Positions 14,042-44,449 of a stretch of 64,000 nt of DNA are shown here, piece after piece (positions within the stretch are counted from its first letter, which is position 1; the number at the start of each line of letters is the position of its first letter). Origin of the DNA: Pecten maximus (taxonomy: Eukaryota). The notes beneath the pieces were generated by a model. The model was not told where the DNA came from and ran no database searches. It saw only the letters and a program-made list of their open reading frames with translations. The DNA lies in the NCBI RefSeq assembly GCF_902652985.1, contig NC_047021.1, forward strand, positions 35,526,001 to 35,590,000, in the 5' to 3' direction. Made by a program: the position numbers and the translations under genes.

Positions 14042-16822
14042 ATGGCGACATTGATGTATGTCATAGGTCTGATAGGCATCGCTACTTGTGCCAGAACTGG
14101 ATCGCATTTGCAGGAACGTTTTCTTTTCCATAATGTTTTCCCGGACCGGATTAATCCTAACTCTCTTCAGAAACTTTGGTGGATCCGGAAAATGTCTCCA
14201 GACTTATATTTGACGGGACGTCTCACGGACAGACAAGTTAAGTATGCGTCCGAGGGGGGATTCAGAACCATTATTACATTATTCCGTTTCAATTCCCCGG
14301 GACAATTGGGACTGGAGACATTCCCGACGACAGATGGGGCGAAGTTGATGGCAAATAGTCTAAACATGAATTTTCGGGCGATATTAGATTCAGAAGACGA
14401 CTGGTATAAAGTGAGTACCATTGAAAAGCTGTCCAAAGCCATTAACGAGATGGAGAAACCAATTCTTCTTCACTGCCATCGTGCACATACCATTACATTT
14501 GCTACATTGATGTATTTGGCTAACCAAACAAGATACGATCCTAGCTTTCGTCCAAAAATTACGAGTGACGTCTTTTATCAAGAAAGTGCATCTATAGGTT
14601 TAGACTTTACGGCAAATAAAACGTCAGAAGTTGTATCGAAAATCACCGGAAGTAAAGTACCGGAAGTGTTTCCGAGGACGACAGCATATCCGACAGAATG
14701 GTCGAACTATTGGCTGGTTCATTTCGTTTACAAAAATTGGTTTGTTGGAGGGCAGATCCACTCCACACATCTATCTGCTATCGTCGACACTGGCATTAAA
14801 CATATCATCAACTTACGGTTAGGAGTCTCAACACACAGTCGGGCGTCACAGGAACCTGTCACATTGCTTAACATCGTGGACGGCACGCCCACCTACGGAA
14901 ATACCACGCTTGGGCCTCGACAATCTCCGGAAACGCTGATCAGAACTAGAATTGATCTTGACAAACCGACTACTTACATATCCGAAACGTCGCCGGTGAA
15001 CTATGAAGAGAGGAACTCCCTGGAGTTTGGAGACGAAACCGGATATAATGAAGACATGGAACAAACTGCTGTGGAGAAAGCTGGATTGACCTACCATCAC
15101 CTTCCGCTGGGTAAGTGGTCGTCTTTTCCTGTAACACGAGACCAACGTCTGCTCCCCATCTCCATATTGAGGCAAGTTGGTTTATTTTAAATTATATTAT
15201 TCAATGGTAATGTTGTAATGCTTGAATGGTTTGTTTTTGTATTCTCCCAGATTCTCATAATTGACTTGTATTTTGTTCAATTTCAGTCAGAGCGTGTCCC
15301 AATGTGTTATTTTACTTTCTTTTGTACTCCAATTATAAGGTGTTATTTGTTTTCACCAAAATTACGAAAGTAGAATATGGAAAGACGCCCAGGTTAAAGC
15401 CTTTCAATGTGTTTGTTTATGAATATAAAACTTTATCAGGTTAAACTTTATGATACCCTATGGATTATCCTCATATAATTTCTACCAAATCTGCTCAGTT
15501 ATGCCAAAATTTCATAAATAAGTATAAGTATGTATAATAAACATCTAAAAATCATACGATATATATTTTGTAAATTTTATCATAAAGGTAAATTTTGAAA
15601 TTTCGTCATTGTCTTTTCTGAAAAAAATACGGTCATATGTATATTTTCATCATTGATGTTTTACGGGAGAAGACTGGAAGCAAACACGGGCGCGCCGAGC
15701 AACATTCCCAGATTATCCCAATACCGAGAAGTTTCACTGTCAATTCCGGATGGCTTTTCGCAGTTAATCTATATGTAATTGTTGTCTAGCGGACACACAT
15801 TGACCCTGTAAATGATATTTTGATTTTACCAAATCCTTTTCATTGCCTTCGTGGCAACAACCAGTGCGTCTGATTTCATCACAGGGAATCGAGAGACACG
15901 ATGGCATTTTATCGAATTTCAAAATGGCCCCCAAAACGTCTCAAAATGTGCTATACACACTAGGGAAGGTCCAAATACATGTAGACTGTAACTAATTCTC
16001 AAGTCCCTGTGACAGAATCTAATATCTGTAGTTCCAAGCAAGTCATGTCCTACCCACATACCCTGATCGCATTATAACACAGATACCATCCAACTAATGA
16101 AAGTATATCCCATTTCTTACAGACGAGAATCGGCAATACAGCAGGGAGTTGTATTCCGAATTTAAAGATAAATTTATGGAGGTCGGACAGACTGGTGAGC
16201 CAATCATCTTACACTGCTCTGACAGCAGACGTGCAGGTAAGGTATTACAAGATTTAGTTTGTACTCAGTTACACGGAAGGTTCAACACAAGGTCACAGAA
16301 ATTGTACAGATCATGGTGGAGTGTCATAATTTGTTAAGACCTTTTTGAATCTTCAAGACTTGTGTTTAGGTAGCAATGCTACGTCATTTCAGAGCCATGT
16401 TGAAATATGTCATTGGATTTCCCCTCACATAACACGCATTGTCACTTTGGATTGTATCTCCATTTATTTATTTAATAGGCTCTACCAATGAAAAATTACA
16501 TGTGCATAGGCATATCTTTAAGTTTGTTTCATATAGAATATACATGGAAAACCTCTGCACTGTAAATATTCTATTACCCGTATATGAACGCAGTTTTACA
16601 GTAACATAAGCCAAAACAGTCGTTATATGTATTTTCTTTATCCTATATATAGCCTACATGACGGTCCTCTCTGCAGCACTCCAGGAGGGTCAGCATTTAC
16701 AATGGGCTTTGGCCAAACTTGACGAGATAGGGTTTCCAATAGGACCGCTGGTCAAACCGGACGTATACAGTATGTATGTCGCGTGGTTGACCGATTCCAT
16801 CAGCAATGAGACTGGCCGCTGA
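14042..16822 (+). CDS. Predicted secreted tandem DUF442/TIGR01244-like (PTP-fold sulfurtransferase/phosphatase-like) protein, copy A (450 aa). Exons 14042-15110, 16123-16236, 16653-16822
   Basis: Hydrophobic N-terminal signal-like peptide. Two repeats of the pattern (G[RQ]...G[FI]xx[IV]IxL...xGxxYxxxP...P[IV][IL]LHC); second active loop HCSDSRR (CX4R). Phase-1 introns with canonical sites, and exon 2 is 114 nt as in copy B. Confidence 0.88.
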
Positions 16823-18752
16823 TGAAGACAAAGCAGGACGATGCCAAAGTCGCTTCAATTGCTGTTAAGATAACCATCATGTTTACAACTCGTTAATTAT
16901 ATCTGACTTATAATTAAACTAAAGCAAATCGACAAAATATGTTTTTATTGGAAAATTTCGCATCTGCTGTTTACTTTTTGTTATTCATAGTAATTTGCAA
17001 TTTATTTCATTTAAATGAATTACAAAGAAAGAAGTTATATCATAAAAATAAATTTCTGCATATAAATGGGATAAAATATATATTTTGATCCGTAGTTTTT
17101 CGTATGGGTCCGGATTAACAAGGTAATTCCATTTCTTGTCAAGCATAAGGCAAGTTTGCTTCTTCAAATAATATTTTTATTGATTTAAACATATCTGTTG
17201 TTAAACTTCTAACAAGGGATTTGGCATAAGATAAAAAAAAGATTGTATTATAACATAACAACCGTGTTTTCTGTGTCCTCGTCCATTACATAAAGTGAGC
17301 TATGAGCACACGTGTTATTGGCCTAGCGGCCCCGTGATTCGTTGTAAGTTTTCATCTTTTCCATTGTGACGTCATAATTTCTTGACGTCACATGTGTTGT
17401 GACATCATTAAAAAAAGAGAAATGCAGTTACAAATATTGCCATTTTTGTATCATGTCACTGATAAAAAATTTTATTATGAAAGCCACGAAGATATCATTT
17501 TATCTCCACAGACTTGAAAAAATAAATAAATAAAAAAAACTCGTAGAATAAACCTCACTTGAAATGGAATCACTGGTACAATCTTCCTTTTCTGTATTGT
17601 TTTACAGACATAACGCCATTATTAATAATTATTTTATAGTAGATGAATCAAGATTGAATATGACATATTTGATTATTTATATCATGAATAATAATTAAAA
17701 AAATAGCTAGATATATATTGTAATAAATTATGACTACCCCATAAACCTTGGACTGATGACTGCTATAGCTTATACGGTTAATACAGGTACCCGTATTAAT
17801 GGTAACTGTACTTAACACATACGTCCGCGAATACAATGAAATTTAAAGGTTTGTTTAGAATTGTTTACTTGTTGCCAAGGGAAGTAAACCATTTTGCAAT
17901 GTATACCTTACCACAAACGACGACACAGGTCACTGGATCTACATATATATATTCATTGATATACATATAGACTTAACAAAAATTAAGTTAAAAATATATA
18001 GGTTCATAAATATATTAAAAAGTAAAATGAATATATTGAATTTATATTATGGAATAATGAACGGAACTTTTAAGAAAAAAAATTATGATTGCTTTCACAG
18101 AGAATGAACGGATAGAGTTATTTCACACATTGATAATTAGACAGGTGAGCGAATACAGGTAAACACAACAAACACGTGTATACACACATACATGTACAGT
18201 TCTGTACGTACTTGGAGTCGTTAAGAACTGGAAATAACAACACTAGGTCATACAGGACAAAGATAGGCCGATTTTTATTTGGTACATACAAAAACACGAC
18301 ATTCGTGATTTTCACTATGCAAAAGTTTTCAGTATTTTTAAACTGGTGTTATCTAAGATCAAATGAAGACCTGTTTGAACGATTTTGGATATATATATAA
18401 CAGATCGAAGGGAAACTAGATAGCGACCACCTGTCCGGATAAAAAACGTCCATGGACTTCATAGAACTGTGCAGTTATCCTGAAAGTTGTAGTCATTTAA
18501 CCAGGAATTGGGATACGCCTCCCTGCCGTCGGAATATTCATGTTTATGAACATGCATTGTTTCAACGTATTTATTTATTCCTGACTATCCTGTATGTTTA
18601 CAGAGACATATCGAAAGGTTTGTGTGTTTAAGGATTAGTTAACAATCGATTCTTTGCACTGTATAACAAGCAGATATGGCCGTTTGTCAGAGACACAACG
18701 ATCTGAGTATATTTTACATTTGGTCATATGATCCGTTTGATTTTTAATAAGT

Positions 18753-21700
18753 ATGCAAAACGGAAGTTTGTTACCAGAAGGATCCACAAGAACCGGAAGT
18801 GTTCTAAACGAAAGGATGCAACAAAATGGCGGCAGATCCTGTCAAATTCATGAAGAGACAACGCCAACACATACAATGGCGATGGCTGCCCTTCCCAAAC
18901 CCGTGGCCGTCGTCTGCTGTGTGTCGAATTTCGCCTTTCCGGGACTTGGTAAGAAAAAATAGCATCACATTACGCATGCGTACTCACTTCCAACATTATA
19001 CATGACGTGCAGTCCCCTGAAGCATATTATGCTGCATTGGAATGTAGGTTTTGTGTAAAAAAGCTTATGTTATTCTCGTTACTTTGTGTTAAAAAAACGT
19101 CAAGGTCATAACTGTTTGTCAAGGTCAAAAAGATTAACAATGAAACAGAGACTTGGCACGAATTTTCAACCCATGGTCCATATTAAATGTATTGAATATG
19201 TACCGTGTATAGACCATGGGTTGGAAATTCGTGCCAAGTTCCTATGGTAGAGGATGTGTTCAAACGAGATAATGTTATGTTGATAGCAATAATTCTGTGC
19301 GAATGGAAGACTTGATGATGTCTGAACAGATAAAGCCATTTTCTAACTGTCAGGAAAATTGTTGACATTCCATGTAGACTATTTTCTTCTCTTTCTGTTG
19401 TTATTGTTAGTTACTAACATTACATCATTCCATACTCTCATAGAGTAAATGACGTCACAACAGAGCAAATTACGTCATACACTGTCTAAAACATTTTTTC
19501 ATCGTACATTTATATAAAGACATGTACATGTATGCAAACAATAACAACCAACATAACAGTTTGATATGTAGGAATATTGCAAGGTTTGAAATGAAATAGA
19601 ATTCGTTGTAAATTAAGCTGACTGATGTCAGCACAGTTCAGTCAACCCCGGATTTTTGAAAACATGAGTAATTTACAAACGTATTTTATCAAAATTTGAT
19701 TTTATAAAATATTTATAAGAAACAAGATTAAGATATAGCATAAATGCTACAAAAGAAGTGATGTTTTGAAAGTTTCAGATATCAAGAACTAACAATTACC
19801 AGAAAAAAAATAATATTTAATATTGTTAACCTAACAATGCTTCTAAAATGCCAAACCGTTGTCCGATCTGGCCAATTACGCCATTGCTATACATAAAGAT
19901 AACAAGCAAAGAAAAAGTCAGCTTAACCTTTGTAAGTGTTAACAACAGTAAAATTGTACACAATGCTTGTTAGTGAGAAAGGCATTCAACCGGACAGGAG
20001 AAACACTCTCCGGTTTAAATGATTTCATTCAATTTCAGCGACATGGAAAGACAAATACTTAATCTCCTTTAAAGAGGTAACAACACATGTTAAGTAGTGG
20101 TTGGATCCTTACGAAGTTAAACCGATAAACATTCTTTACAGAAAAAAAAACAAGTATGTAAACATAGCTGAATGTCGTTAAATGCTTATGTGTCTCGTAA
20201 TAGAATTAAAGGGGTATTCCTTCGTTTGAATAAAGTTTAGGTCGTCAAAATGGAACTTAACGGAAAACATGTATTTTCCCCCAAGTAGTGGAAGTTATAA
20301 TCTTTACATTAATTCGGCAGTTTTACTCGTAAGGTAAACCGAAGTTCTGCAAGTATTAAGTCCTAAATATTTTGAATTCGCTAATTACCGCAAAGACAGA
20401 CGGTATTTGTGTTAGTTTAGTTTAGTTTAAACGTATTTTATTGTAACAAATTTACAACAGGATTGGGCACAAGTTATTACAACTTATAAACGCCCTCTCC
20501 TAACACAGTGACATATAAATAATTACAAAATGCTATAAAACACATATTTAGTATTAAATAATATATGTATATTTTTTTATAGAAAGATGGAGAGAGAGAG
20601 GGGGGAGAGAGAGATAGAGAGAGTGAGGGGGAGAGAGAGTGGGGAGAGGGAGAGAGAGATAACTTATGGATGGGCAATAAAAATGTACAAAATAACACAA
20701 GCAACAATGGTATACATTCAATAACGTATAACGCATATAACAAACAAGTAATAAGGATAAACATTCTCATTTCAGACACAATGGATACACGTTTTACTTT
20801 AGAATATAAATCGATTGATTTCTTAAAATCTGTTACTGTCCTTTATGAAATGTTGAACACATAAGAATACTTCAGAATTAATATTAAAAGACATTTCTTG
20901 ATTACCATATAACAGAAAGTCTAAATCTAAGGGTACATGTAAATTTAAATCATCTAACTTCTGAAAGAGAATGTTTCTTTGAATAATGTAACGGCCACAC
21001 TCAAAGAAGAAGTGATGAGCATTCTCACACAAATGTCCACGCGAGCAGCTCGGAGTTTCCGCAAGGTTCACTCGAAATAAATCATAATTTAAAGAACTAC
21101 ACTGGTGCCTAAGCTTCGTGTGACTAATGCTAATTTTGCGGTCACCGATGCCAAAGAAGGGAGGAGGAGAAATCTGATTTCTAGGTTTCAAAGAATTTTT
21201 GAAAATGCTAAGAGAAGCCGACGATCTGACAGAATGTTCAAGGGTGTTCCAACAACGAAGCGTAGACGGTAAGAATGAAGAGGAAGTTGACGGTAATCTA
21301 CAATATGGGATTCTATAATCATTTACATTTCTCAATGGATACCTAACATTATCTTGAACAGTAGGGGGAAGTAAAGAAAAAAGATACTCTGGAGTTTGAT
21401 CGTTATGCATCTTATACAAAAGTTGGAAGTTTTCTCCTCTTTCTTCTAGCAGACAAAGTTTCTAAACCAGTTTCAAATTGTAAGGCGTAAACACTTGCAT
21501 ATGATGGAAGACCCATGATAATTCTTGCCGCTTCGCGTTGGGCTTTTTCTAACTTTTCAGATTCTAAATTAGTACATCCATCCCACAATTCACAAGCATA
21601 CTCTAAGATTGGTAAAATAAAAGTTAGGTTAATTCTCAATAGAGCGTCTCGTCTTAGTATACATTTCAATTTTCTCAGAGTATTTATTTTCTTCATAACA

Positions 21701-24700
21701 GAAGTGTATATAGCTTCTACATGATCTCCCCATTTTACACTAGAGTTTAAAGTAACACCCAAATGCTTATGGCTATCTGTAAAGTCTAAAATGTTTCCGT
21801 CAAATTCAAGATCTAATATTTCATCTAGTTCATTTCTATTCGAGATAAAAAGTACATCAGTTTTGACCGAAGTATTAAGAGATTCAAGATCTCTATTAAG
21901 AATAGTTTGAATTTGAATACAAGAAGAGGAGGAACATTGAAGAGAGGTGTCATCAGCGAATAGACGAGAAGCTGAATAAAAAATATATGCTATATCGTTA
22001 ATGTATATCAAAAATAAAAGAGGCCCTAAGATAGAACCTTGCGGAACCCCGGCACAATTAAGCTCAATTTTGAAACAGACTCGTTAATACATACCATTTA
22101 CTGCCTTTGATGTAAGTAATCCTTTAACCAAACGATCAGTTTACCTCCTATTCCATATGATTATAATTTTACTAATAGACCGGTATATGTGTACAATTTG
22201 TCATTTTTTTTCCTGTACATTTCGGCGAAAATTTCGTTATACTAGTAGACACAAACACATATATAATCCTTGTTCGGACATCATCAATAGAAATTTCGCA
22301 TTTTCTGTTGTCCGAACGAAGGAATGCCCCTTTAAAAGTTAATTATTGCAAAACTCTATAAATAACTTGCCTGTTTTGGGCATGGGGTGGTTGTAGTTAG
22401 TTGTATGAACTATTATTGCATAAACCAGCTAAACAGCGAAACAAAAATGTATTTTTCTGGCACACACCGTACAGCACAAAAAACAATGTCGGTCTTTATT
22501 TTCTTATCTATAATGATAAACACAACACCTGCTCCGGACCTTATTCACCTAATGTAACGACACTTTGTGTACAAAACATGTAAAATTTAGAAGCGGTATA
22601 CATGGGAATAGCAGAAATTGAATAAGATAAATAGATCAATGGAATTTGAAAGTGAAAGTAAATCCATACTATCTCAAATATCACAGCCAGCTGTTTGTTT
22701 TGCAATACGATCGATACGGATTTTTTTTCTCGCAATAATCTGTATCAAAATGTTATAAAGTAGCACTTGCAAAATCAGATAAGACAATGTTATGATAAAA
22801 ACATTGTAAACGTAAAAGCCAAGATTTTTAATGCCGAATCAATACGCATGGGTCTTTGTGTCTATGCTGCAATAGGAGATATCAAGCGGTGATGTTCAGG
22901 GTTTCCGGACTTTTCTTCTCCAAAGTGGAAAAAATGGGGAAAAATAAGAGATTTAGTACATTGTTATTAAGGTACATGTACATCAAGTTTTATGATACTG
23001 TTCTTCTTTTCATTAGACAGACATACATTTTCCGGAAGTCACACCCACAACCGGAAGTTGCATATGCTTGGAGTCAAAATCAACATACAAAGTATTATAT
23101 TTACATTCTGTGTTGCATTTGCCTATATGTCGTTAGTAAACCAAATTGTATTCACGAGACTGTATACTACAATTTACAGTGATTCGGTCAGAGTAGGAAT
23201 ACAGCCCCAGGTGTTGCTGGTCAAAACAATGGCCGCCAGTTACTTTCGGCCTGGAGAGATTTCGAATGCTAGCATTTATTATCCACAAAACAAAAAATAA
23301 AGCAACTTCACAAGTTATGAGAGTAATATTTTATAATTAAAACAAAATGTAGTCAACACAAAATAACTATAAGCACCGTTCTTGATCTAAGAATGATCAA
23401 ATTGTCAATGTCGTCACACTCACAGGGGCTCGTTTCCGAATTTTCAGAAATGTAAGACAACATTAAAAGTCCAGTATTTGTAAAAATAAAAATAAGATAA
23501 AAATCTTGTGAAAAATCGGGAGCATCGACATGGTTTCCGGTTGTGTATGTATATTAGATTTTAGTTTTGTGGTTATTCACTGATGTTAAAGACCTACCTT
23601 ACAAAATCGAGCCCCTGTGAAGTTGAAAATCGTCTGCTAAGTTAGCGACACTGATGTGACCGGTTAGACTGAAATCTTTTTCGAACGAAATATCTTTGGA
23701 ATCGTTTTCACCTACTGTCAAGACGACTTTCATTTAGAATTTAAGAACTGAAATTCTTCTGAAAACAATGTAAATCCAGTCGATAGAAACTGAAGTATAT
23801 CCGAGGAATCGAGTCTGTCCTGTGCAATACCCGTTCAAAGTCGCATCACTTCTAAATGTTAACCGTATAGCATTGCGCCGAAAAACGACTTAGATTTTAA
23901 ACAATCAAAAATTATGCAATTGTGAATAACTTGACGATATCTACAAACGTATATGAAATAGAAAATAAAGCCAAATTTGTGTAAAACCATTGTATGTGTT
24001 TGCTATTAATAACGACATGAGGGACTATATTATTCCTTCTGGAAGTTTCGGCTGTTCCGGTATTTGAACCTGATGACGTCAGTGATAGGGGAAGCGGCAA
24101 ATTTAAACGCGTCTTAAGCTACAGTAAATAAAAAAAAAATATGAATGTAAATATAAGCATTGAACTGTTACCAAATGGTAGTATACAGTCGATATGAATA
24201 CAATTTGGATGACAGATAAATAGAATGGATGAACTATTTATCTGTCAAGTAAACAACCGGAAGCTAATATATTTTTTCGTATTTTCCAGGAACCATGATG
24301 ACTGGATTTGCTATGTGCTGCTGTGATCGACATGGCGTTAGGAATCGTTCGGATGTGTGTGCTAACTGTACAGCTAACGTTGTGATTGGACTGTTACAAA
24401 TCCTCCTTACCCCAATCTTCCTGCTTGGCTGGTTATGGAGCTGTATGTGGGGAATACTCTTCCTTCGTACCGCAGGTAACTTTATACATGTTATCATTTC
24501 CTTGCTTGAACCGGATGTTGTTAACACGGGAAATAAAGGAGCACACCGTGATATCTGTAACCAAACAGTACTAGGTAGCCCTAGTTTTCTCTGGCCCTGT
24601 CACTATGTCTCGTGTAGGGCCAGAGCGCACTACTATATGAAAACGTGGAATTCTCCGACACCGTTTGGTGTCACTAAGAATCTGGTGCAAATACAATAAA

Positions 24701-31812: not shown

Positions 31813-32426
31813 GTATCCGGGTTACAAAGGACTAGAAAATATAAAACGATAAAATCATGTAACATCCAAAACACATTTTTTGTACAATGCTATTTCAAAC
31901 ATTGATTCCTTGATTTCCATTTTCTTGATACGGAATTCGAAACAGTTCATTGAGTTATGAATACATAAAAAGTTATAGTATATGTATATAAACTGTAAAA
32001 TATGGCATGTTTGGGCAGCATCATCAATAGCACGTTCTTCAAATACGGTGTTCAATACATACAATATAAAATCTACTGATTTACACAAGTAATCATCATT
32101 ATCGTATCATCATTTTTTATAATTCAACTCGTTAATAAAAATGACACGTGGTGCATCACTTTCTATTTTCATTTATGTTAAGGAAGAAGCTTGTACAAAC
32201 ATAACCTGTTGCCTTATTCCAGATTAAATCTTTTTGATTAACAAACTATTTCAAAACAATAGAACAAAAATAAAGTAAGTAAATTATGTTTGACATTGAT
32301 GATTTTTAAGTAACAAAAATGCATGTATATTGTTTCTTAAATGTAATTAATACAAAAATCATATTTTTATATGGATTTTAACGGTAAATATGTATTAAAA
32401 TTATACAGGAATTTTCATGAAGATAA

Positions 32427-35400
32427 TCACAGTTCGTCTTTGGTTGAGTTGAATTTCTTGGTGTCTAACCAGGCTGCGTACATAAGATACACGTCCTTAT
32501 GTTCGGTGGGACTAACAACAAACCCGAGCTCGCGCGTCCGCTGTAGGGCCCAGTTAAGGTCCTTGTTGTACTGTAGGGCGGCGGCCAGCACCGTCATGTA
32601 GGCTGTGGATTGTAACAGAACAAGGCAATGTAAAAATGGTTAAATTGTATCAGAAAAAAAACAACGTTTTATCCAACAAAGGAGAAAACAACTTTGTTGA
32701 CACAATTTTGATTTTATTTTCCAAAGTATGATAGTATCAAAGTAAGAAGTAGAAGAAGAAGTCAAGTTTATCTGTTTATAAAGATGGCACCATTTTAGAT
32801 ACTCAAGTTAAATATTACTCTAGATATCATGGCATAATCGCTCTAATTTTCTTCACGATGTGAAAGAAACCGGATGGACAGCATTTCTGTTTTACATACC
32901 GGAAATGACGTCAACTACATTCCGGCCTACAAACAGGTTTCTTGTGGTACTGATTGATTTATTTCCGAAAACTTGCCATGGTAGCCGACTTTAAAATTCT
33001 AACCAGTCGCCTCTTTGTGGCCTGTGATAATGGTCTGATGTTCTGGTCAGTTTTCTGGTCAGTTTAAGCGGAATACTGTATATACTTACCCACTCTGTGG
33101 GCGCTAGCACAGTGAACTAGGACAGGCTCTCCCGTTCTCCCGATCTCCAGTAACTTATCCTTGTATTTCCCGAATAACTCCGGACTAAACTTTCCACTGG
33201 ACACTGCAAATACATGGAAATTAGTAAAATTATATCCACAGGAAACCGAACATATTTGACTCAAAGATTAGTAATATTTATGACACTTTTGTATTTCACT
33301 CATGAAAGACTGTTCCGGCGTTTTTTCATTAAGAGTTTGTTCCCCTTGGAAATATTTAGTACTCCCCCATCCCAACATTACCTTAGTTATAAGCTTTGCG
33401 TTCATACCAGTAACGTAATACCCCCACAGTGACTTTTCTCTGTAGTAAGATGATTAGATCATAGATGCTCGACTTCTTTTAATAATACATATAAGTCATC
33501 CATAAAGGCATTTAATCAAAAATGTTGTGTCGTCGTTGAAAAAAAATATGTGAGAATCCAACTTTAAGATATATAAGTATCACGATTATGTGGACAATTT
33601 CTAAGTGCAGTCAGGGACCTCTCTATTTAAACGGTGTACAATGTACCTGAGTTTACTCATTTTCGCTTTAAAAAGTTTTAATCGCAACCTAGCATGAGCG
33701 GTATTTCATGGTAGGTAGGTGTACATGTACGTGTGTCTTATCAGTAACTACCGAGGTTAATTTTTAAAGGAGAACTTTCAATATTATTACGCTGTGCGTT
33801 TTATGTTTGATAATGTTTAGGGTGATATTTACAGTTAATTATTAAACGAAACTATGCAAATGTTTGAATGTGTGTTTAAAAAAAAAAAATACAAATGTAA
33901 TAACATTTGTTAGACACACCTTTGGTTTTCGTATGACGTCATTAAAATACCTGTATGCAAGCTACATAACTATACACAATGAATATGCATTTGATCTTAA
34001 TGCACTTAAAAATAAATTTTATTTATTTAACAACATTTGTGAAGCAAGTTATATCAACTTATATCCATCACGCTTGTTGGCCATATTTGAAGCGCGCGAG
34101 GGGTCTTACTGTGGGAGGAAATCGGGAGTACCTGGGGAAAACCCACGTGGTCAGGCAGGTGACCCCAATATCTTTTCACGCCCGATCGCGAGAACCAACC
34201 CCGGCCGCATATTGTATAATCCTTATATACCAAATATTATCGCTGTTATATAAACCTGTTATTATACTATACATTGGTCAATTACACTGTCTTACATATA
34301 TATACATTGAATATCAATATCAACACCACCATATGAACTGGATATAATCATTATTATGTGAAACACTTTTTTTCACAAATATACATGTATGTACTGGATA
34401 TTATCATCAAATCGGATAACACCACTGTTGTAATCTAAAATATATGATATAATTATATTTTAGCACAAATCAACGTGCGGGAGGGTAAATATGGCACTAT
34501 TGCTTCTTTGTTTAAAATCATACTATGGTTAATTAATTAATATTCAGCCTTATATCACAACGGTTTTTCTGGTCGTTGTAATATTTTTGTAGAATAGATA
34601 TAAAATCCAAAGATGTTGAAGTATGGTCCAAGATATCGTATTTATTAAACTAAACTTTCTAGGAGTCAGGCGGGTGATTTACGGAATATCCGAAAATTGA
34701 CCCGTGCAGTCCGCACTCTAGGTTTTAATTAATTTTACAAAACGTTACACATGGTATTAAGCTGGAGTTAATGCAATAATTGACAGGTGGCATTTTGTCA
34801 CATTTCAGACTGGCGAGATACCCGCGGCTAGGTGTCATACCTGGCCAGACCAGTTAAGTAACTCAATTAACATCAAAAGATAAAAGTACATACATATTAC
34901 GTGGTTTAATCCGATAACAATGAGAAAAAAGGAATTATGCATATCACTTTCAAAAGACATATTGCTTGTTGAGATGTAATCAAATGATTTTTAAATAAAA
35001 CATTGAACAAAGCGAAATAAGACGGCGAATAAATTCAAAATTATGAAAAATGTAAAATGTCCAATAAATGTTCCTATTATCACTTATTTCATAAAATTAA
35101 CTTTGGAACTTAGATCAATAAAAAAGAAAAGAAAAAAAAAAAAAAAAACATTGATGAATACATCAAATAATATAGCAAACGATAAACCTTGTATTGAAGG
35201 TTCACATTATGAATGTATTGCGTCATTAAGCATTAAACTCGTAGACATCACAGTCAGTGTATTCTCGCTGACCTGTCTCCAAGGATACACACGTGCATGT
35301 GTAAAACATGTTTTACTTACGGACTGGCATGTGATAATAATGGAAACCCGCCTTTTCCAGAACCTGTCTTTCTCGATCTTCATTATAGCCTATCTCGTCT

Positions 35401-36404
35401 CCGAACTCTCCCGGATTTCTCGACTCGAAGTTCACGGCCGAATTCTTGGACACAAAGGTCTTGTTTTTTGTTGGGTCAAGGACAAGTTTCGTTAAAGTTT
35501 CCGGGATTTGTCGCGGACCTGTCTCTTTGCTGCCGTACGTCGGTGTGCCGTCTTTGACGTTGATGAGAGTTACCTGCTCTTGGGAAGGATTTCCGTTTTC
35601 GTCCTGAACACCCATTCTCATGTTGATCACGTGGATAAAGCCGGCCATTTGTAAAGTTTGAAGATGACTTTCGCTTATTTGTCCAGCTGTGAACCAGTTT
35701 TTATAGACAGGGTGGGCCATCCAGTAATCATACCACTCATCTGGCACAGAGTTTGGTTCCGGTAAATTCTCTGGAATTGCTTCTCCAGTAACTTCCGCTG
35801 CAGTCATTTGCGTAAAGTCCATAGCAAAATCTAAACCCATGGCGGCAGCCATCTTGTATACTTTTTCGAAACTGACTTGAGGTATGTAATTTTGGTCGTG
35901 TTTTGAAGCGTTGGCTAAATACATCATAGTCACAAACGTTATCGTGTATGCCCGGTTACAATGAAGTAAAACAGGCCTTTTCAAGGTAGGAATAATGGCA
36001 GACATTTTATTTACAGCTTCGATCGATGCCCAATCGCAGTTGTCTGTCTCTAATACAACCCGATACTCGAGTCCTGCTTGCTTGGCGATTTCAGCAGCTT
36101 CGGCACTCGTAGGAATGTATTCATCACCGATACTGGATGGCTCATCATCTTGGAAAAGCGACACAATGCTTTTAAATCCTCCGTCTGCTGCATATTTAAT
36201 TTGTCGTTCGGATAACCTGCCAGCGACATGGAAATCTGGCGTTATTTCCTTGGCCCACCATAGTTTTTTAGGGGCTCGAAGTCCCGGGGCACTTCTCTGT
36301 AGAAATGTGTCAACATAGACGCTATTTGAATGTTGTACATCGGCTCGCACTGACGTAACGCATAATTGAAATGTCAACAAAATCAGTGTTAATATTCGAT
36401 ACAT
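32427..36404 (-). CDS. Predicted ER-luminal (signal peptide + KDEL) tandem DUF442/TIGR01244-like protein, copy B (457 aa). Exons 36404-35321, 33203-33090, 32602-32427
   Basis: Signal peptide MYRILTLILLTFQLCVTSVRA. Donor C|gtaagt. Exon 2 (114 nt) encodes GEPVLVHCASAHRV (CX4R). Exon 3 reads AYMTVLAAALQ...FNSTKDEL*. Exon structure is identical to copy A. Confidence 0.92.
34050..34210 (-). mobile_element. V-SINE remnant
   Basis: Minus strand GTGGGTTTTCCCCAGGTACTCCCGATTTCCTCCCAC matches the conserved V-domain core, preceded by a degenerate B-box-like stretch. Confidence 0.75.
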
Positions 36405-36467
36405 GTCTCAGATCACTCAAAACTGTACCTTTATCCGAATGCTAGATACCCGAGTAATCCCGAATGG

Positions 36468-36505
36468 TGACGTGGCTATATATATCTGACTTCCTGTGCA
36501 CGTGG
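36468..36505 (-). promoter_or_regulatory. Putative core promoter of copy B: TATA box with adjacent TGACGTGG (UPRE-like) and CCACGTG motifs
   Basis: TATATATA at 36477-36485, about 75 bp upstream of the ATG. TGACGTGG at 36468-36475 and CACGTGG at 36499-36505. Confidence 0.45.
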
Positions 36506-36773
36506 AAACACCGAAGCTGATATAACTTTCTTCATTCATATATACACATTCACACACAAATTAAAATCGATTATTGTTACATCATCTCGTAGCAGACTTG
36601 TTATGTTTCATTTTAACAGAAAATCAGCACTATCTACAGGGTTACGACGTTACCAGTTTCAATGGCTTGTCCTTTACGATATCCGTGTATACTGCACAGC
36701 TGCGCTTCTCACGCAAATCCATCACGTATACAGCTATGTGTGTGTGTGTGGCGTGTGTTAGGTGGCATGTTGT

Positions 36774-38829: not shown

Positions 38830-38980
38830 AGGGTCGACTCTAAAACCATGACAGTAGTGTTTACTTGATTGGCTAAGTCCAATCTAAAACCACGGCATCA
38901 GAGTTTACTTGACTTGACTAAGACCAATCTGAAACCATGACAGTAGAGTTTACTTGGCTTTACTAAGACCAATCTGAAAT
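38830..38980. repeat. About 46-bp tandem repeat x3
   Basis: Recurrent CTAAGACCAATCTGAAACCATGACAGTAGAGTTTACTT motif. Confidence 0.75.
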
Positions 38981-41559
38981 CTTAAGAACGGAGTTGGCTA
39001 GACTTTTGAACCCATGAAAACCCATTTGGGGAGCCCGACTGGTCCTTGCTTTACATTTGCCAACACTCTATCTATACCTACATATGTTCTACAAAGATAA
39101 GACGATTTATAGCACTATGTGAAATAATGGACTAGAAATACATATGGGAAACAAGGAGCTGGAGACAAATGTGACCATTTAAGGGGGTTTTCTATGACAG
39201 ATCAAGACACATTGACCAGACATTTCTTTTCCTTACATTAGTACATTAGAAATGCATGTCTTATATTGTGACAATGATACAAGGCTACTACATATTTGTT
39301 GGAAATGTAAGGTTTCGTAAAAACATATTTGTATGAAAATATAGAATGACTTCTGTTTATGCAATACAGACGTATGTAACCACTTCTTCGTTTGTAACAG
39401 TTATGGAGATCAGAAAGTAAAATAGCACCGTAAACTGAAGCATTTAATACTACAAATCCTGCAGATGTTACTACATAAATGTGAAGATTTATTTCTAGAA
39501 GACCAGTGGATTAAAAACTTTTGCCTTTCTTCCAAATACAGAAAATAAGAAAATGAATATCAATATTATATACAAATATTGTTACTTTTGTTGTATCTAA
39601 TGTTACTCTTTGTCTTTCTCCACTCTGTTTGTGTCCCTCTCTCCGTCTCTCTAATATACATGTAACACCCTATAAAAATGTATATTGTAAAATGCTATTG
39701 AAAAAGGGCTTGATATCAGATGGAAAACCCTATTCCCGAGTATATAAAACATGAGGTAAGGTTTAAGTGTTGTCTAAACAAGCCATGGCCGAAATTTCCC
39801 CAAATCATGTCAGGATAAATTGATGTGAAAATCTCTGCAGAGGTTTTGGGGATTAGAAAATATCAACATGATAGAGAAACTAGAACAAACAAAAAACAAA
39901 CAATAAAAACCCCAGAAAATACTCAAATTAAACTGAAAAAGTAAGTAGACTGGAAAACCAACAGAGATATATTAACGAAACCTTAATTTGAAATAATAAT
40001 CGATAAAACGAGGAGAAATCAACAAAGAGTAGCGACATTATAACGAATAACGAAATCTTAATTTAACTAATAATCGATAAGACCAGAGAAAAAATATACG
40101 AAAAAAGGTTTGCATGGATGACCTTGAATGTATTAAAGGGTAAGCGTCTTCTGCTTCGATGACGTCACCCACAGTACAAATCTAGGCCAAATCTTGGTTA
40201 AGTCACGTTCAACGAATCAACCAGGCATATCGACGAGCTTCAGTCACGTTCAACGGTACCACAAGGCATATCAACGAGCACCAGTCACGTTTGTCAAAGT
40301 CAAATGGTATATGGGAGCAAACAATTTTTCCAATATATACATGTATATATGAGGACTGTTCTATATATGTACGTACGCTACAACAAGAAAACGTGCACTC
40401 TGGACAACAATACTGGTATAAGTATATCTAAAACTACCCGACGTGAAAGTTTATCGATGCTGGACATTCTAAATGGGCATCAGGCGAAAAGATAGAATTG
40501 ATGTTTGTTGGTTAAGGATAAGAAGGAATTCGTATAGACTGATAGTCAACTAAATATTTCTGACATTGAGACTGGATTTATTTTTTTAAGATACTGAAGT
40601 AAATATGTTTCTAAGATGCAAGGAAAATAAATAAAAAACTTAAACAGAAATAGAAACATGTTCCTTTTTTATGATATATATATATATATATTTACAACGA
40701 ATCTGAAAACATGCTTACGGTACATCTCTGAATTGAGAGAATTCCTTTAAGACAGAAAACTGTTTTACAGAGAAAAATATTATATTGCTTGTTTTATTAC
40801 TAACATCACTTAATAAACAACATATATCTAGCCATGAAATCATAACGAGACGATACTATTAAACTGTTCCAATATAGTAGTTAAGCTAGAATTAACAGAG
40901 ATGCAAACCTATTTGGATCAAGCCAATATTTAATTATTTCCAATCCTTCGCTGTAATTTTAATATTTCGTATTAGAAGGAATGAGAAATGATCAATTTAA
41001 ATCTAACTACTCTAACCTCAGCACTAACACTGAAAGTTTACCGAAATTATTACTACAAGGTTATATAGAGGACATTCTAAATATAAAAATCTAAATGTTA
41101 TCAGCGACACATCACAGTATTTACGACTTTTATTTAAACTCCTCGATAACTCGTGGTGACGTTGGAATTGTATCTGCAGTACAAACCTGCCCTCTCATGC
41201 ACAATACAGTGCAGGTCATTCACCGAACTACGCGGCTATGTGCACACATCGTCGGGTCTAGTGCATTTTATAGAACGTTAAAAGCGACGTGCGGAATGTC
41301 ACGTGCATTTTGAGTTCATAATGCTTCATACATGTATGTGTATATACTGTTTATCACAAAATGATATAGAATGACACATGATATGCAAATATGTCTAATT
41401 TACACCAACAAATGAAAGAAGCAATAACAACGTCCTAAATACTATAGAACTTATTCAGGACGCAGTTGATTAATTATTGACAACAATTTTGAAAAATGTA
41501 AAGAAAGTTCAAACTTTTGGAAGGATTGTAGTAGTGTTACATATGTGGTGGAATGGTAA

Positions 41560-42190
41560 ATTATATAACGTTTAGAAAGGGTAGTAGTAGTGTAAAGTAT
41601 GTTACGGTTTGAAGGTGGTAGTAGTGTAAAGTACATGTATGTTGCTTTTGGAGGGTGGCAGTAGTGTAAAGAATGCAGCGTTTGAAAAGGTGGTGCTAGT
41701 GTAAAGTATGTAAATTTAGAAAGGTGGTAGAAGTGTAAAGTATGTAAAGTTTGGAAGGATGGTAATAGTGTAAAGTATAACTTTTGGAGGATGGTAATAG
41801 TGTAAAGTATGTAACTTTTGGAGGATGGTAATAGTGTAAAGTATGTAACTTTTGGTGGGTGGTAATAGTGTAAAGTATGTAAAGTTTGGAAGGATGGTAA
41901 TAGTGTAAAGTATAACTTTTGGTGGGTGGTAATAGTGTAAAGTATGTAAAGTTTGGAAGGATGGTAATAGTGTAAAGTATAACTTTTGGTGGGTGGTAAT
42001 AGTGTAAAGTATGTAAAGTTTGGAAGGATGGTAATAGTGTAAAGTATAACTTTTGGTGGGTGGTAGTAGTGTAAAGTATGTAAAGTTTGGAAGGATGGTA
42101 ATAGTGTAAAGTATAACTTTTGGTGGGTGGTAGAAGTGTAAAGTATGTAACGTTTGGAAGGTGATAGTAGTGTCAAGTACGTAACTTTTT
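41560..42190. repeat. Minisatellite of alternating 35/33-bp units (68-bp higher-order repeat)
   Basis: GGTAATAGTGTAAAGTATGTAAAGTTTGGAAGGAT alternates with GGTAATAGTGTAAAGTATAACTTTTGGTGGGT. Confidence 0.95.
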
Positions 42191-43362
42191 GTATGATATG
42201 TATATATACAAACTATTCTTATTTTCAATCGATCACAATTACTCTATGTTGGAGAATCACAGTTTATTACCACTATTTTTTCCCCTTGTAGTTAAGTATA
42301 TTTTACTTGATTAAAACATGGTATGTATAATTAAGCTATTGAAATTCCTGCCACCTACCGATATTGAAATATCAACTATTTATTTATATGCATGTGCATA
42401 TGAGTAAACAGAACAATTGTAAAATAATATTTATTTGGCCTATCAATGTCACTTGTCAATCACCTGCTATTGTTGTATTATTGACACAGTAACGACGAAA
42501 ACTATCTACATAAGCTGTTAGTGATGTCTGTTGACGAAGACCATCTGGATTATAATATTATTCATTGACTGCACAAATGACACGCAAATTTATACCAATA
42601 TCTTTGATACTCAATTTAATCTTTTATAGATGCGCAATAATGAATATTAGATTACAAAATAGAACTTCCATCACGACATTCCGTATTTATATATTTACAA
42701 AAAAGTCACTGTGTTGTGTCCAGCTGTTTTGATCATTTTGTTTCGCGATAGAACATTTTTATATAGGTAATGCTGTAGTTGTATTTTAGCTGGTTTACCT
42801 TTATAAAGGTGAACCCAATTGTGTAACATATCACAGCGGTGTCAAAACATTTACACGTGCACAAACAAGATGATCATAAGACCTTTCTTAACAATAATAC
42901 GTTTCCCATATATCTACATATATAAAACCAAAATATATATTATTGATATTATTGTTTATGTTCAGAGTTATATGTAACAAATACACTGTATTTGTTCTAT
43001 ACACAAATGCAACAGAGCGAATGGTGACATACATGCAAATATATAGTGATATTTTCAAATGATTTGTCGTTCGGAATTATTCTTTCAAAAATGTAAATAC
43101 GTATTCAAATATACTGCAAAGCTGTGATACGAAGATAAAATTTTATATTTCGTTGTATAAGCAGCAAACTAACTCATAAAATGAGGATGTGATTTAAGTT
43201 TTTTGCATTTTGCAGACATTTTCTCCGGCTGCTTTTGGATATAGCTTCATTGGTGATTCAATTTAACAAAGGTTTAGTTAGAATCGAATAGCTTGCTAGA
43301 TAACTGTAGTGTATGCAATGTTCTGTTCATTACTCGAACACATCTTTGGTAGATATACTTAC

Positions 43363-44449
43363 GGACTGGCATATGGTAATACTGGAACCCTGCTTCTTCC
43401 AGAACCTGTCTTTCCCGGTCTTCGTTATAACCAATCTCGTCTCCGAACTCACCGGAGTTTCTCGCTTCGAAGTTTACGCCCGAATCTTCGGCGATGAAAG
43501 AGTTTTCTCTTCCCGAGTCGAGAACGATTCCTTTAAGGGTGTCCGGGATTTGTCTCGGACCTGTCTCTTTGCTGCCGTACGTCGGTGTGCCGTCTTTGAC
43601 GTTGATGAGAGTTACTTGCTCTTGTGAAGGATTTCCGTTTTCGTCATCGACACCCATTCTCATATTGATCACATGGATGAAGCCATCCATTTTTAACTTT
43701 TCCAAATGACTTTCGCGTATTTGTCCGGCTGTATACCAGTTCTTATAGACAGGGTGCGCCATCCAATAATCGTACCACACTTTTGGTACCACGTTTGGCG
43801 ACGGTACATTTTCCGGGATGACTTCGCCGGTTATTTCTGCAGCAGTCTTCCGCGTAAAGTCCATAGTAAAATCTATGCCCATGACAGAGGCCATCTTATA
43901 AAATTTCTGTATATCCATTCGCGGTGAGTAATTTGGGTCTTGTTTTGAAGCATTAGCCATGTGCATCATTGTTACAAAGGATATCGTATAGGCTCGGTGA
44001 CAATGAAGTAGAACTGGTTTTTCTAAAGTCGGCATGATCGCAGATAATTTGTCCACGGCTTGAACTGAAGCCCAATCTGAATTTCCAGATTCCAGAACAA
44101 CCCGATGCTGAAGTCCAGCGTGTTTAGCAATTTTTGCAGCCTCGTCGCTCGTTGGGAGATACTCATCGCCGATGTTTGATGGCTCATCGTAATGGTACAA
44201 AGAGACAATGCTTTTGAATCCCCCGTCTGCTGCGTATTTGATCTGACGTTCGGATAACCGTCCAGCGACGTGAAAGTCGGGTGTCAATTCTTTGGCCCAC
44301 CATAGCTTCTTTGGAGCCCGTAATCCTGGAGCACCTCTCTGTACTAAGGTATCCACATATGTACGGCTTGGCTGTTGCACGTTGGCAGCTCGTAAAGGTG
44401 AGACGAATAGTCTTAAAGAAACCAAACGTAATGCCAAAGCCAGTGTCAT
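43363..44449 (-). CDS. Tandem DUF442-like protein, copy C: intact first coding exon (1087 nt, phase 1), probably spliced to copy B exons 2-3
   Basis: Colinear with copy B exon 1, same donor (ATGCCAGTCC|gtaagt), many synonymous differences and no stops. No exon 2/3 homologs were seen between 36.4 and 43.3 kb. Confidence 0.88.

What the first reader, a model, noticed from the sequence alone, without database searches (positions are those of the whole stretch)
14042..44449. Animal family of secretory-pathway tandem DUF442-like (CX4R) enzymes, a mainly bacterial fold
Seen: three paralogs, each with two PTP-fold repeats (xGQ/GR...G[FI]xx[IV]IN[LM]R...AGxxYxHxP[VL]...P[VI]LxHC). Established: DUF442/TIGR01244 domains carry a CX4R loop instead of the PTP CX5R. 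They are best known in bacteria, as sulfurtransferase modules fused to Blh persulfide dioxygenase or SQR and as atypical phosphatases. Inference: an expanded, intron-poor, signal-peptide-bearing animal family that could handle sulfide/persulfide or luminal/extracellular dephosphorylation, possibly acquired by ancient horizontal transfer.
Basis: partly seen in the sequence, partly recalled or inferred. Interest (0 to 1): 0.8.

Follow-up and report, generated by a model that had tools for sequence, protein, structure and literature searches.

The report
Scallop ER tandem DUF442-like enzymes
The scallop locus holds two genes (one with two interchangeable first exons) for secretory-pathway proteins made of two phosphatase-fold domains related to bacterial DUF442 sulfur-transfer enzymes; the family is old and inherited vertically in marine invertebrates, not a recent bacterial import, and its chemistry is untested.

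Summary
The window is from Pecten maximus. The three 1.1-kb ORFs are real and paralogous, but they are not three genes. Two are mutually exclusive first exons (isoforms X1 and X2) of one gene, LOC117330705. Both splice to one shared 114-nt catalytic-loop exon and one KDEL exon, and RNA contigs confirm this. The third ORF belongs to a separate gene without KDEL. The genome has no further copies, so the family is not expanded.

Pfam PF04273, TIGR01244 and a confident AlphaFold model support two PTP/DUF442-fold domains. Domain 1 best matches NMA1982 (Z 14.6). Domain 2 matches Tk-PTP and DUF442 3gxh (Z 13-14). Only domain 2 carries the invariant H-C-x4-R loop. Domain 1 has C-x4-T, with no arginine.

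A signal peptide, a conserved N-glycosylation sequon and a C-terminal [KRH]xEL in 33 of 40 members point to the ER lumen.

Named members are molluscs, annelids and hemichordates, and all three share both intron positions. Two-domain relatives occur in nuclear contigs of protists, and the duplication predates that split. A bacterial transfer into animals is therefore not supported.

The most likely function is a Cys393-dependent luminal sulfane-sulfur transferase. A phosphatase is the main rival.

The scan had already noted the shared-exon layout and the KDEL exon on this same stretch.

The parts
43363..44449 (-). Gene B (LOC117330705) alternative first exon 1a (isoform X1). Encodes the signal peptide, domain 1 and about two thirds of domain 2. 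Ends in phase 1 after H-M-P-V, followed by a GT donor.
   Evidence: 100% tblastn match to P0005 residues 1-362. Junction read. An RNA contig in run X6 joins exon 2 to 28 bases that match 43363..43390 exactly.
35321..36404 (-). Gene B alternative first exon 1b (isoform X2), with the same content as exon 1a. It is 74% identical to exon 1a at protein level, dN/dS 0.10, dS 1.55.
   Evidence: 100% match to P0001 residues 1-361. Junction read. RNA joint 33203/35321 seen in runs X4 and X6. dN/dS.
33090..33203 (-). Gene B shared exon 2 (114 nt). Encodes the strand and helix leading into the domain 2 catalytic loop H-C-A-S-A-H-R, whose codons lie at 33094..33111.
   Evidence: Sequence and AG/GT boundaries. 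tblastn. RNA joints to exon 3 and to both first exons. Cys393 and Arg398 are invariant in 40 of 40 members.
32427..32602 (-). Gene B shared exon 3. Encodes the C-terminal helices of domain 2 and the KDEL ER-retrieval signal plus stop codon.
   Evidence: Sequence. tblastn. RNA joint 32602/33090 seen in runs X3, X4 and X6.
35943..35960 (-). Domain 1 loop of X2, C149-N-R-A-Y-T154: a CX4T loop with no arginine at C+5. The matching loop of X1 (C150..T155) lies at 43985..44002.
   Evidence: Residue numbers. Ungapped alignment with D2 and bacterial loops. Coordinates computed from the ORF start.
14042..15110 (+). Gene A exon 1: signal peptide, domain 1 (loop C145-H-R-A-H-T at 14474..14491) and most of domain 2. 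Phase-1 GT donor after H-L-P-L.
   Evidence: ORF. Junction read. 44-48% identical to other molluscan members. TIGR01244 E 4.1e-5.
16123..16236 (+). Gene A exon 2 (114 nt, the same length and phases as gene B exon 2). Encodes the domain 2 loop H-C-S-D-S-R-R; the CX4R codons lie at 16215..16232.
   Evidence: Sequence and splice sites. tblastn. Separate translation.
16653..16822 (+). Gene A exon 3: the C-terminal helices of domain 2. It ends ...N-E-T-G-R-stop, with no KDEL-type signal.
   Evidence: Sequence. tblastn (51% to P0001 residues 399-453). Translation.

Best explanation
The locus encodes two members of an old eukaryotic family of secretory-pathway proteins. Each protein has two tandem PTP-fold domains related to bacterial DUF442.

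Gene B (LOC117330705) makes two isoforms. It chooses one of two 1.1-kb first exons, each encoding a signal peptide, domain 1 and most of domain 2. Either exon is spliced to a shared 114-nt exon that completes the domain 2 active-site loop, and then to a shared last exon ending in KDEL. The product should therefore stay in the ER lumen. Gene A has the same three-exon plan but no KDEL, so it is probably secreted or travels further along the pathway.

Domain 2 is the catalytic domain: its H-C-x4-R loop is invariant. Domain 1 keeps a Cys in most members but has Thr where the arginine should be. It probably acts as an accessory or relay domain packed against domain 2, as in other tandem PTP-fold proteins.

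The most likely chemistry (inferred, not shown) is transfer of sulfane sulfur through a Cys393 persulfide, as in the DUF442 domains of Blh and SQR.

The gene was inherited vertically at least since the protostome-deuterostome ancestor. The two-domain architecture is older than animals.
For: Gene structure and isoforms:
- The annotated isoforms X1 and X2 match the window at 100%.
- Splice sites were read directly.
- RNA contigs join exon 3 to exon 2, exon 2 to exon 1b, and exon 2 to exon 1a.
- The two first exons have dN/dS 0.10.
- The X2 orthologues of other scallop genera (81-84% identical) are closer to Pecten X2 than Pecten X1 is (73%).

Fold and family:
- PF04273 scores 38.0 and 32.9 bits, above the 26.1 cut-off. 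TIGR01244 gives E 1.9e-8.
- The model has pLDDT 90.4.
- D1 versus 2f46: Z 14.6 over 140 of 142 residues. D2 versus Tk-PTP: Z 13.9. D2 versus DUF442 3gxh: Z 13.0.
- Foldseek's top whole-chain hits are tandem PTP-fold proteins: 3f41 phytase and Cdc14.

Active site:
- D2 C..R is present in 40 of 40 members; D1 is C..T in 34 of 40.
- The D2 loop is one residue shorter than the CX5R of TpbA.
- No acidic residue is conserved where a PTP general acid would sit.
- D2 'HCAS..R' equals the loop of bacterial sulfur-transfer DUF442s that sit in ArsR-DUF442-MBL/PDO-TauE/YeeE operons.
- The DUF442 of Blh is a robust sulfurtransferase (PMC5823870). The CX4R protein NMA1982 is a phosphatase with kcat of only 4.4e-5 per s (PMC10716126).

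ER location:
- Hydrophobic N-termini in 37 of 40 members, a conserved sequon at N165 in 34 of 40, and an x-x-[ED]-L C-terminus in 33 of 40.

Descent:
- Named members come from Mollusca, Annelida and Hemichordata.
- Both intron positions are identical in Pecten, Capitella and Saccoglossus.
- D1 and D2 form separate clades, each containing animals and protists.
- No prokaryotic genome of 185,579 species encodes the signature peptides.
Against: - No activity, localisation or persulfide has been measured for any member.
- The fold is a phosphatase fold, and sequence profiles hit dual-specificity phosphatases (TpbA, VH1, VHR) about as well as solved DUF442s.
- Sulfide oxidation in animals is mitochondrial, and an ER-luminal sulfurtransferase has no known partner there.
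- No sulfur-metabolism gene lies near the locus.
- TIGR01244's curated cut-off of 85.85 bits is far from met.
- Signal peptides were judged only by hydrophobicity, not by a dedicated predictor.
- The bacterial outgroup in the tree is small: 9 sequences from two phyla.
Confidence: 0.5

Rival explanations
1. It is a luminal or secreted phosphatase. Domain 2 hydrolyses phosphate esters on secretory proteins, inositol phosphates, lipids or sugars through a Cys393 phospho-intermediate. Domain 1 acts as a pseudophosphatase substrate-binding domain, as in Cdc14 or the D2 domains of receptor PTPs.
For: - The fold is a PTP fold, with best matches to small PTPs (Tk-PTP Z 13.9, SsoPTP Z 12.7) and tandem PTP-fold proteins.
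- Profile hits go to TpbA, VH1, DUSP14 and VHR.
- A CX4R loop can support PTP-type catalysis in NMA1982 (PMC10716126).
- Weak Pfam hits go to DSPc and PTP-like phytase.
Against: - No conserved general-acid Asp follows the YYHxP strand.
- The only assayed CX4R phosphatase is extremely slow, with kcat 4.4e-5 per s, whereas DUF442 sulfurtransferase activity is robust.
- The closest bacterial relatives lie in sulfide-oxidation operons.
Confidence: 0.3
2. This is the reader's transfer hypothesis: an animal ancestor acquired a bacterial DUF442 gene horizontally, and the gene then duplicated in tandem and gained a signal peptide.
For: - Single-domain DUF442 is overwhelmingly bacterial. The nearest large clusters by language-model features are bacterial PF04273 families (scores below 0.9, a lead only).
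- The animal distribution is patchy. No vertebrate, arthropod, nematode, echinoderm or cnidarian appears among the named hits.
Against: - Both introns are shared across three phyla.
- Two-domain and three-domain relatives sit in nuclear contigs of microbial eukaryotes beside proteasome, ERO1, PUF and PIG-U genes, and one is from the chrysophyte Epipyxis.
- The D1 and D2 clades each unite animals with protists (98 and 98), with bacteria outside (96).
- There is no close prokaryotic relative.
- A bacterial origin of the whole eukaryotic clade, before animals, remains possible but is a different claim.
Confidence: 0.07
3. It is a non-catalytic ER-resident binding protein (a pseudoenzyme) that uses the PTP-fold pockets to bind anionic ligands or client proteins.
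For: - Domain 1 has lost the arginine and, in some lineages, the Cys.
- Many PTP-fold proteins are pseudophosphatases (general knowledge).
Against: - His392-Cys393 and Arg398 of domain 2 are invariant or nearly so across molluscs, annelids, hemichordates and protists. This is typical of a working nucleophile loop.
Confidence: 0.1
4. The three long ORFs are three independent paralogous genes, each with its own downstream exons.
For: Each ORF starts with ATG and a signal-peptide-like segment.
Against: - The whole genome has only two copies of exon 2 and two of exon 3 for three first exons.
- RNA contigs join both minus-strand first exons to the same exon 2.
- NCBI models them as isoforms in four scallop genera.
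Confidence: 0.02

Closest known systems
Bacterial DUF442 / TIGR01244 sulfur-transfer domains (the Blh ST domain of Xylella/Agrobacterium, the SQR-fused DUF442 of Cupriavidus pinatubonensis, and stand-alone forms in ArsR-DUF442-PDO-TauE operons)
   Same: PTP-like fold, H-C-x4-R loop (often H-C-A-S-x-x-R), a single nucleophilic Cys, and no conserved general acid. PF04273 is the best Pfam match.
   Different: The animal proteins have two tandem domains with a 60-residue conserved insert in domain 2, a signal peptide and KDEL. They are not fused or linked to a persulfide dioxygenase or SQR, are only about 27-35% identical over parts of a domain, and fall far below the TIGR01244 cut-off.
NMA1982 of Neisseria meningitidis (PDB 2f46), a DUF442-type CX4R phosphatase
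   Same: It is the best structural match of domain 1 (Z 14.6, rmsd 2.8 over 140 of 142 residues). Its CX4R loop length is the same as in domain 2.
   Different: NMA1982 is a single-domain cytoplasmic bacterial protein with Asp71 as general acid. Domain 1 of the scallop proteins lacks the loop arginine, and domain 2 lacks a conserved acid.
Tandem PTP-fold proteins: Cdc14 (inactive A domain plus active B domain), the Mitsuokella tandem PTP-like phytase (3f41), and receptor PTP D1-D2
   Same: Two PTP-fold domains lie in one chain, with only one carrying the full catalytic loop. These are Foldseek's top whole-chain hits.
   Different: In those proteins the loops are CX5R and the function is phosphate hydrolysis. 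They have a different subfamily origin and are not ER-luminal. Whole-chain superposition is poor (rmsd 14-25), so the relative placement of the two domains differs or does not superpose.
Variable-first-exon genes (UGT1A, clustered protocadherins)
   Same: Large alternative first exons each encode the N-terminal bulk of the protein and are spliced to shared constant exons.
   Different: There are only two variable exons, and the constant exons carry the catalytic loop itself. Separate promoters are inferred, not shown.

Membership tests
DUF442 / Pfam PF04273 (BLH_phosphatase) | Profile match above Pfam's gathering score (26.1 bits) | tested here: met
   P0001 scores 38.0 bits and P0005 32.9 bits, each with two stretches. 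X2 exon 1 alone scores 28.2 bits. X1 exon 1 alone (23.8 bits) and gene A exon 1 (no hit) fall below the cut-off.
DUF442 / Pfam PF04273 (BLH_phosphatase) | PTP-like alpha/beta fold closest to solved DUF442 structures | tested here: met
   D1 versus 2f46 gives Z 14.6. D2 versus 3gxh gives Z 13.0, tied with Tk-PTP at 13.9. Model pLDDT is 90.4.
DUF442 / Pfam PF04273 (BLH_phosphatase) | C-x4-R active-site loop, one residue shorter than the PTP CX5R | tested here: met
   Met in domain 2: 40 of 40 animal members, also in the protist groups and in gene A. It is one residue shorter than TpbA's CX5R in the HMM alignment. Not met in domain 1, which is C-x4-T/S.
TIGR01244 family sulfur transferase (NCBIfam) | Score above the curated cut-off (85.85 bits) | tested here: not met
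   The best score is 34.4 bits, E 1.9e-8. The proteins are related to this subfamily but are not members of it.
Blh-type bifunctional sulfur transferase/dioxygenase (NF040641) | Fusion or operon linkage with an ETHE1-type persulfide dioxygenase | tested here: not met
   Only the ST-domain part matches (30.6 bits against a cut-off of 625). There is no MBL-fold domain in the proteins, and no such gene among the window's long ORFs.
Sulfurtransferase (rhodanese-type activity) | Cys-persulfide intermediate and thiosulfate/GSSH sulfur transfer | not testable with these tools
   Inferred from the loop length and the relatives. An enzyme assay is needed.
Classical Cys-based PTP/DSP phosphatases | C-x5-R P-loop plus a conserved general-acid Asp | tested here: not met
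   The loop is CX4R. No column between P360 and C393 has a conserved acidic residue in loop positions: the maximum is 33% at residue 362.
ER-resident soluble proteins | N-terminal signal peptide plus a C-terminal KDEL-type retrieval motif | tested here: met
   KDEL is encoded in exon 3. An x-x-[ED]-L C-terminus occurs in 33 of 40 members, a hydrophobic N-terminus in 37 of 40, and a conserved N-x-S/T sequon in 34 of 40. Gene A lacks KDEL. No dedicated signal-peptide predictor was available.

The most novel reading that the evidence does not exclude
An ER-luminal sulfane-sulfur (persulfide) transferase that has been conserved since the bilaterian ancestor and lost in vertebrates and ecdysozoans. 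A rhodanese-like C-x4-T loop in domain 1 and a DUF442 C-x4-R loop in domain 2 would form a two-cysteine relay. This would link sulfide/persulfide chemistry to the oxidative-folding compartment of sulfide-exposed marine invertebrates. In scallops it would be diversified by swapping the whole N-terminal two thirds of the enzyme through alternative first exons.
Probability: 0.25. Interest if true: 0.75.

Novelty: new variant of a known kind. Interest (0 to 1): 0.5.

Why it matters
DUF442 has been studied only in bacteria, as a sulfur-transfer module of sulfide detoxification or as a very slow atypical phosphatase. This work defines a eukaryotic clade with its own architecture: an N-terminal arginine-less domain, a C-terminal CX4R domain with a conserved insert, a signal peptide and KDEL. 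The clade is present in molluscs, annelids, hemichordates and protists, and no member has been studied experimentally.

If it transfers sulfur, it would place persulfide chemistry in the ER lumen of animals that live with sulfide. If it is a phosphatase, it would be a rare luminal Cys-phosphatase opposite the secretory-pathway kinases.

The scallop gene also gives a compact example of variable first exons that exchange most of an enzyme while keeping the catalytic loop constant. The horizontal-transfer story does not hold, which is itself useful.

Tried and rejected
1. A scan of 185,579 bacterial and archaeal genomes with the family's most conserved peptides gave 44 pattern matches, none confirmed by tblastn. 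No close prokaryotic relative was found.
2. A PF04273 search of the window's own genome was blank. The weak domain score cannot pass a genome-sized E-value. The protein search is the valid copy count.
3. The ESM Atlas search by features returned only bacterial PF04273-type clusters, with scores of 0.89 or less. I treat this as a lead only.
4. My first reading was that the domain 1 loop is three residues shorter than the domain 2 loop (C-x-R). I rejected it after an ungapped alignment with domain 2 and the bacterial loops showed equal length, with Thr at the Arg position.
5. A literature search for DUF442 together with mollusc, bivalve or annelid terms, or with 'eukaryot', found no description of an animal family.
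6. Rfam found nothing in the window.
7. The upstream and intronic flanks of exons 1a and 1b share no detectable similarity, so there is no recent segmental duplication.
8. No names could be obtained for most of the unnamed Logan, ENA and JGI clusters. Absence from other animal phyla is therefore not shown.
9. Gene A was analysed exon by exon only. 

Full report
**Identity of the window and the observation.**
- The three long ORFs lie at the stated coordinates.
- A word-based protein search gave a 100% match to Pecten maximus 'uncharacterized protein LOC117330705 isoform X2' (P0001, 457 aa). It also found isoform X1 (P0005, 458 aa).
- Mapping both proteins back by tblastn showed that X1 uses 44449..43364 and X2 uses 36404..35322. 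Both then use the same two short downstream pieces, near 33228..33088 and 32633..32430.
- The plus-strand ORF (gene A) has its own downstream pieces near 16104..16301 and 16649..16813.

**Exon boundaries and copy number.**
- I read every junction in the sequence.
- Gene B has exon 1a at 44449..43363, exon 1b at 36404..35321, exon 2 at 33203..33090 and exon 3 at 32602..32427.
- Gene A has exon 1 at 14042..15110, exon 2 at 16123..16236 and exon 3 at 16653..16822.
- All introns are GT-AG and phase 1, and exon 2 is 114 nt in both genes.
- A six-frame search of the whole 918-Mb assembly finds exactly three first exons, two exon 2s and two exon 3s, all in this window.
- So the 'three paralogs' are two genes, one with two alternative first exons, and the family is not expanded in this genome.

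**RNA evidence.**
- Contigs of four runs were laid on 32400..36450.
- The joint 32602/33090 (exon 3 to exon 2) appears in three runs.
- The joint 33203/35321 (exon 2 to exon 1b) appears in two runs.
- In run X6, a contig ending at the exon 2 acceptor continues with 28 bases that occur once in the window, exactly at 43363..43390. That is the 3' end of exon 1a.
- Both first exons are therefore spliced to the same exon 2.
- The runs are contigs, so they show presence, not abundance. Two of the four runs are RNA only by guess.

**Age of the two first exons.**
- They differ by dN 0.155 and dS 1.55, giving dN/dS 0.10. Their flanks are unalignable.
- X2 orthologues in Argopecten, Ylistrum and Mizuhopecten are 81-84% identical to Pecten X2, against 73% for Pecten X1.
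- The exon duplication is therefore old (it predates these scallop genera), and both copies are under purifying selection.
- This agrees with the scan's earlier notes s1-784572 and s1-784604 on the same stretch, which I tested independently here.

**Family and fold.**
- PF04273 (BLH_phosphatase, formerly DUF442) is the best Pfam family. It scores 38.0 bits for P0001 and 32.9 for P0005, each with two stretches, against a cut-off of 26.1.
- On the exon 1 ORFs alone, only X2 passes.
- TIGR01244 matches at E 1.9e-8, but far below its curated cut-off.
- An AlphaFold model built on a 40-sequence alignment is confident: pLDDT 90.4, pTM 0.88.
- Foldseek's best whole-chain hits are tandem PTP-fold proteins, namely 3f41 phytase and Cdc14. 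Its best single-domain hits are DUF442 structures 2f46 and 3gxh and Tk-PTP.
- VIA-align separates the two domains. Residues 49-206 match NMA1982/2f46 at Z 14.6 over 140 of 142 residues. Residues 225-447 match Tk-PTP (Z 13.9), ShufPTP (13.8) and DUF442 3gxh (13.0).
- A profile search of PDB sequences hits TpbA, VH1, DUSP14 and VHR (E 5e-5 to 0.02) and 3gxg (0.017). Its alignment shows the family loop to be one residue shorter than TpbA's CX5R.

**Active-site loops.**
- In the 40-sequence alignment, Cys393 and Arg398 of domain 2 are invariant, and His392 is present in 39 of 40.
- The domain 1 loop aligns without gaps to the domain 2 and bacterial loops. It reads C-[DNH]-R-[GA]-Y-T, so Thr replaces the arginine: C..T in 34 of 40 and C..S in 1.
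- The Cys itself is lost in Mytilus and Pinctada paralogs, in Patella, in one Ptychodera copy and in Lamellibrachia.
- No acidic residue is conserved in the loop after the Y-Y-H-x-P strand, where a PTP general acid would sit.
- Domain 2 carries a conserved insert of about 60 residues with several invariant positions: E276, N282, R298, Q299, N325, E333, G335 and D336. The bacterial proteins lack it.

**Secretory-pathway features.**
- 37 of 40 members have a hydrophobic N-terminal segment.
- 34 of 40 keep an N-x-S/T sequon at N165, which gene A also keeps.
- 33 of 40 end in x-x-[ED]-L: KDEL 13, KEEL 5 and others.
- Gene B ends in KDEL. Gene A ends N-E-T-G-R.
- ER-lumen residence of gene B products is thus well supported by sequence, though not by experiment.

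**Distribution.**
- Named members come from bivalves and gastropods, from the annelids Owenia, Capitella and Lamellibrachia, and from the hemichordates Saccoglossus, Ptychodera and Glandiceps.
- Many unnamed metagenomic 'DUF442 family' proteins of 350-410 aa end a few residues after the H-x-P motif, with G-K or G-E. This is what a prokaryotic gene caller would produce by running into this intron's GT donor.
- The exhaustive profile search found 101 clusters at E <= 1e-30 and 1105 at E <= 1e-3.
- Among these are two further groups of two-domain proteins with the same asymmetry, D1 without Arg and D2 with CX4R.
- One group is found in EukProt (the chrysophyte Epipyxis), in MMETSP, and on contigs whose neighbours are PUF, SRR1, PIG-U or SET genes. 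The other has a member in the Tara eukaryotic catalogue.
- A three-domain relative lies beside proteasome, ERO1 and HAT-repeat genes.

**Test of the transfer idea.**
1. Capitella and Saccoglossus genes have the same two intron positions as the Pecten genes: after H-x-P-V and just after the CX4R arginine.
2. In a maximum-likelihood tree of 51 D1s, 51 D2s and 9 bacterial proteins, all D1s form one clade (SH-aLRT 98) and all D2s another (98). Bacteria lie outside (96), animal D2s are monophyletic (96) and molluscs form a clade (98).
3. No prokaryotic genome encodes the family's signature peptides.

The duplication and the D1/D2 asymmetry therefore predate the split between the animal and protist versions, and the bilaterian genes descend vertically. 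The caveats are that the bacterial sample is small and most protist sequences are unnamed. A bacterial origin of the whole eukaryotic clade is neither shown nor excluded.

**Function.**
- The closest bacterial matches in annotated plasmids are a Nostoc and Chroococcidiopsis 'PTP family' protein (27-29% to D1) and a Limimaricola 'sulfur transferase domain' protein (35% to the D2 C-terminal half).
- Both the Nostoc and the Limimaricola genes lie in ArsR/BigR-like regulator, DUF442, MBL-fold dioxygenase and TauE or YeeE operons. Their loops, H-C-A-S-T-M-R and H-C-A-S-G-K-R, resemble the family's H-C-A-S-x-x-R.
- The DUF442 domain of Blh transfers sulfur from thiosulfate to cyanide or GSH, with Vmax about 18 umol per min per mg (PMC5823870). 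The SQR-fused DUF442 is a rhodanese acting through Cys94 (PMC9163753).
- The CX4R protein NMA1982 is a true but extremely slow phosphatase (PMC10716126).
- It is established knowledge of the rhodanese/Cdc25 superfamily that six-residue loops serve sulfur and seven-residue loops serve phosphate.
- Taken together, I rate sulfane-sulfur transfer through a Cys393 persulfide as the most likely chemistry, at about 0.45 of the total. A luminal phosphatase is next at about 0.3, and a non-catalytic role is at about 0.1.
- Domain 1's C-x-x-G-x-T loop resembles the rhodanese loop pattern. That comparison is from memory and is a lead only. Domain 1 might be a second sulfur site rather than a dead domain.
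- The surroundings give no functional hint. They hold Spec3-family exons, a LIM-domain ORF, a retroelement fragment and a minisatellite.

**Limits.**
- Gene A was handled exon by exon.
- Gene A's expression was not tested.
- No model coordinates were available, so the geometry between the two loops and the position of the insert are unknown.
- Absence from other phyla is not established.

**Verdict.** The DUF442-like, secretory-pathway reading is supported and sharpened: ER-resident, D2 catalytic, D1 arginine-less, with variable first exons. The expansion and horizontal-transfer parts are not supported. This is a new, uncharacterised eukaryotic variant of a known fold family and is of moderate interest.

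Noticed in passing
window 24295-24699 (+): This ORF has a clear Spec3 (PF15795, ectodermal ciliogenesis protein) match, E 1.1e-12. It looks like a second stum/SPEC3-type exon, between gene A and gene B. It is separate from the stum/SPEC3 feature that the scan noted at 1029-4979.
   Followed up: partly
window 20823-22011 (-): Two adjoining ORFs of 198 and 199 aa carry a reverse-transcriptase-like 'F-A-D-D' motif. They are probably a decayed non-LTR retrotransposon fragment. They have no Pfam hit at E <= 0.01.
   Followed up: partly
window 41556-42189: A minisatellite with period 34/67 nt, about 8-18 copies and 78-90% matches lies in the intron between exon 1a and exon 1b. It produces the spurious 241-aa and 170-aa repeat ORFs.
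   Followed up: yes
window 34032-34167: A short segment inside the intron is covered at high depth in all four RNA-type runs. The contigs run on into unrelated sequence on both sides, so this is a dispersed repeat (SINE-like) and not part of the gene. Rfam finds nothing there.
   Followed up: partly
window 61124-62806 (-): A 560-aa ORF has a LIM domain (PF00412, E 1.1e-6). It is an unrelated neighbouring gene or exon.
   Followed up: no
P0061, P0062, P0064 (Mytilus paralogs): A second Mytilus paralog group lacks the hydrophobic signal segment, the KDEL-type end and the domain 1 Cys, but keeps the domain 2 CX4R. Its Arg-rich N-terminus might target another compartment, possibly mitochondria.
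   Followed up: no
L013 6001-7002 (P0205): A three-domain relative with three CX4R loops lies in a microbial-eukaryote contig, about 2.7 kb from an ERO1 gene. The proximity is probably coincidental, but it is worth noting given the ER hypothesis.
   Followed up: no
L001 (Logan contig, 19.8 kb, P0129): The two-domain relative here is intronless. It sits in a gene-dense contig whose neighbours mostly lack Pfam hits, apart from one SET-domain protein. The contig could be a compact protist genome or possibly a giant virus; this was not resolved.
   Followed up: no
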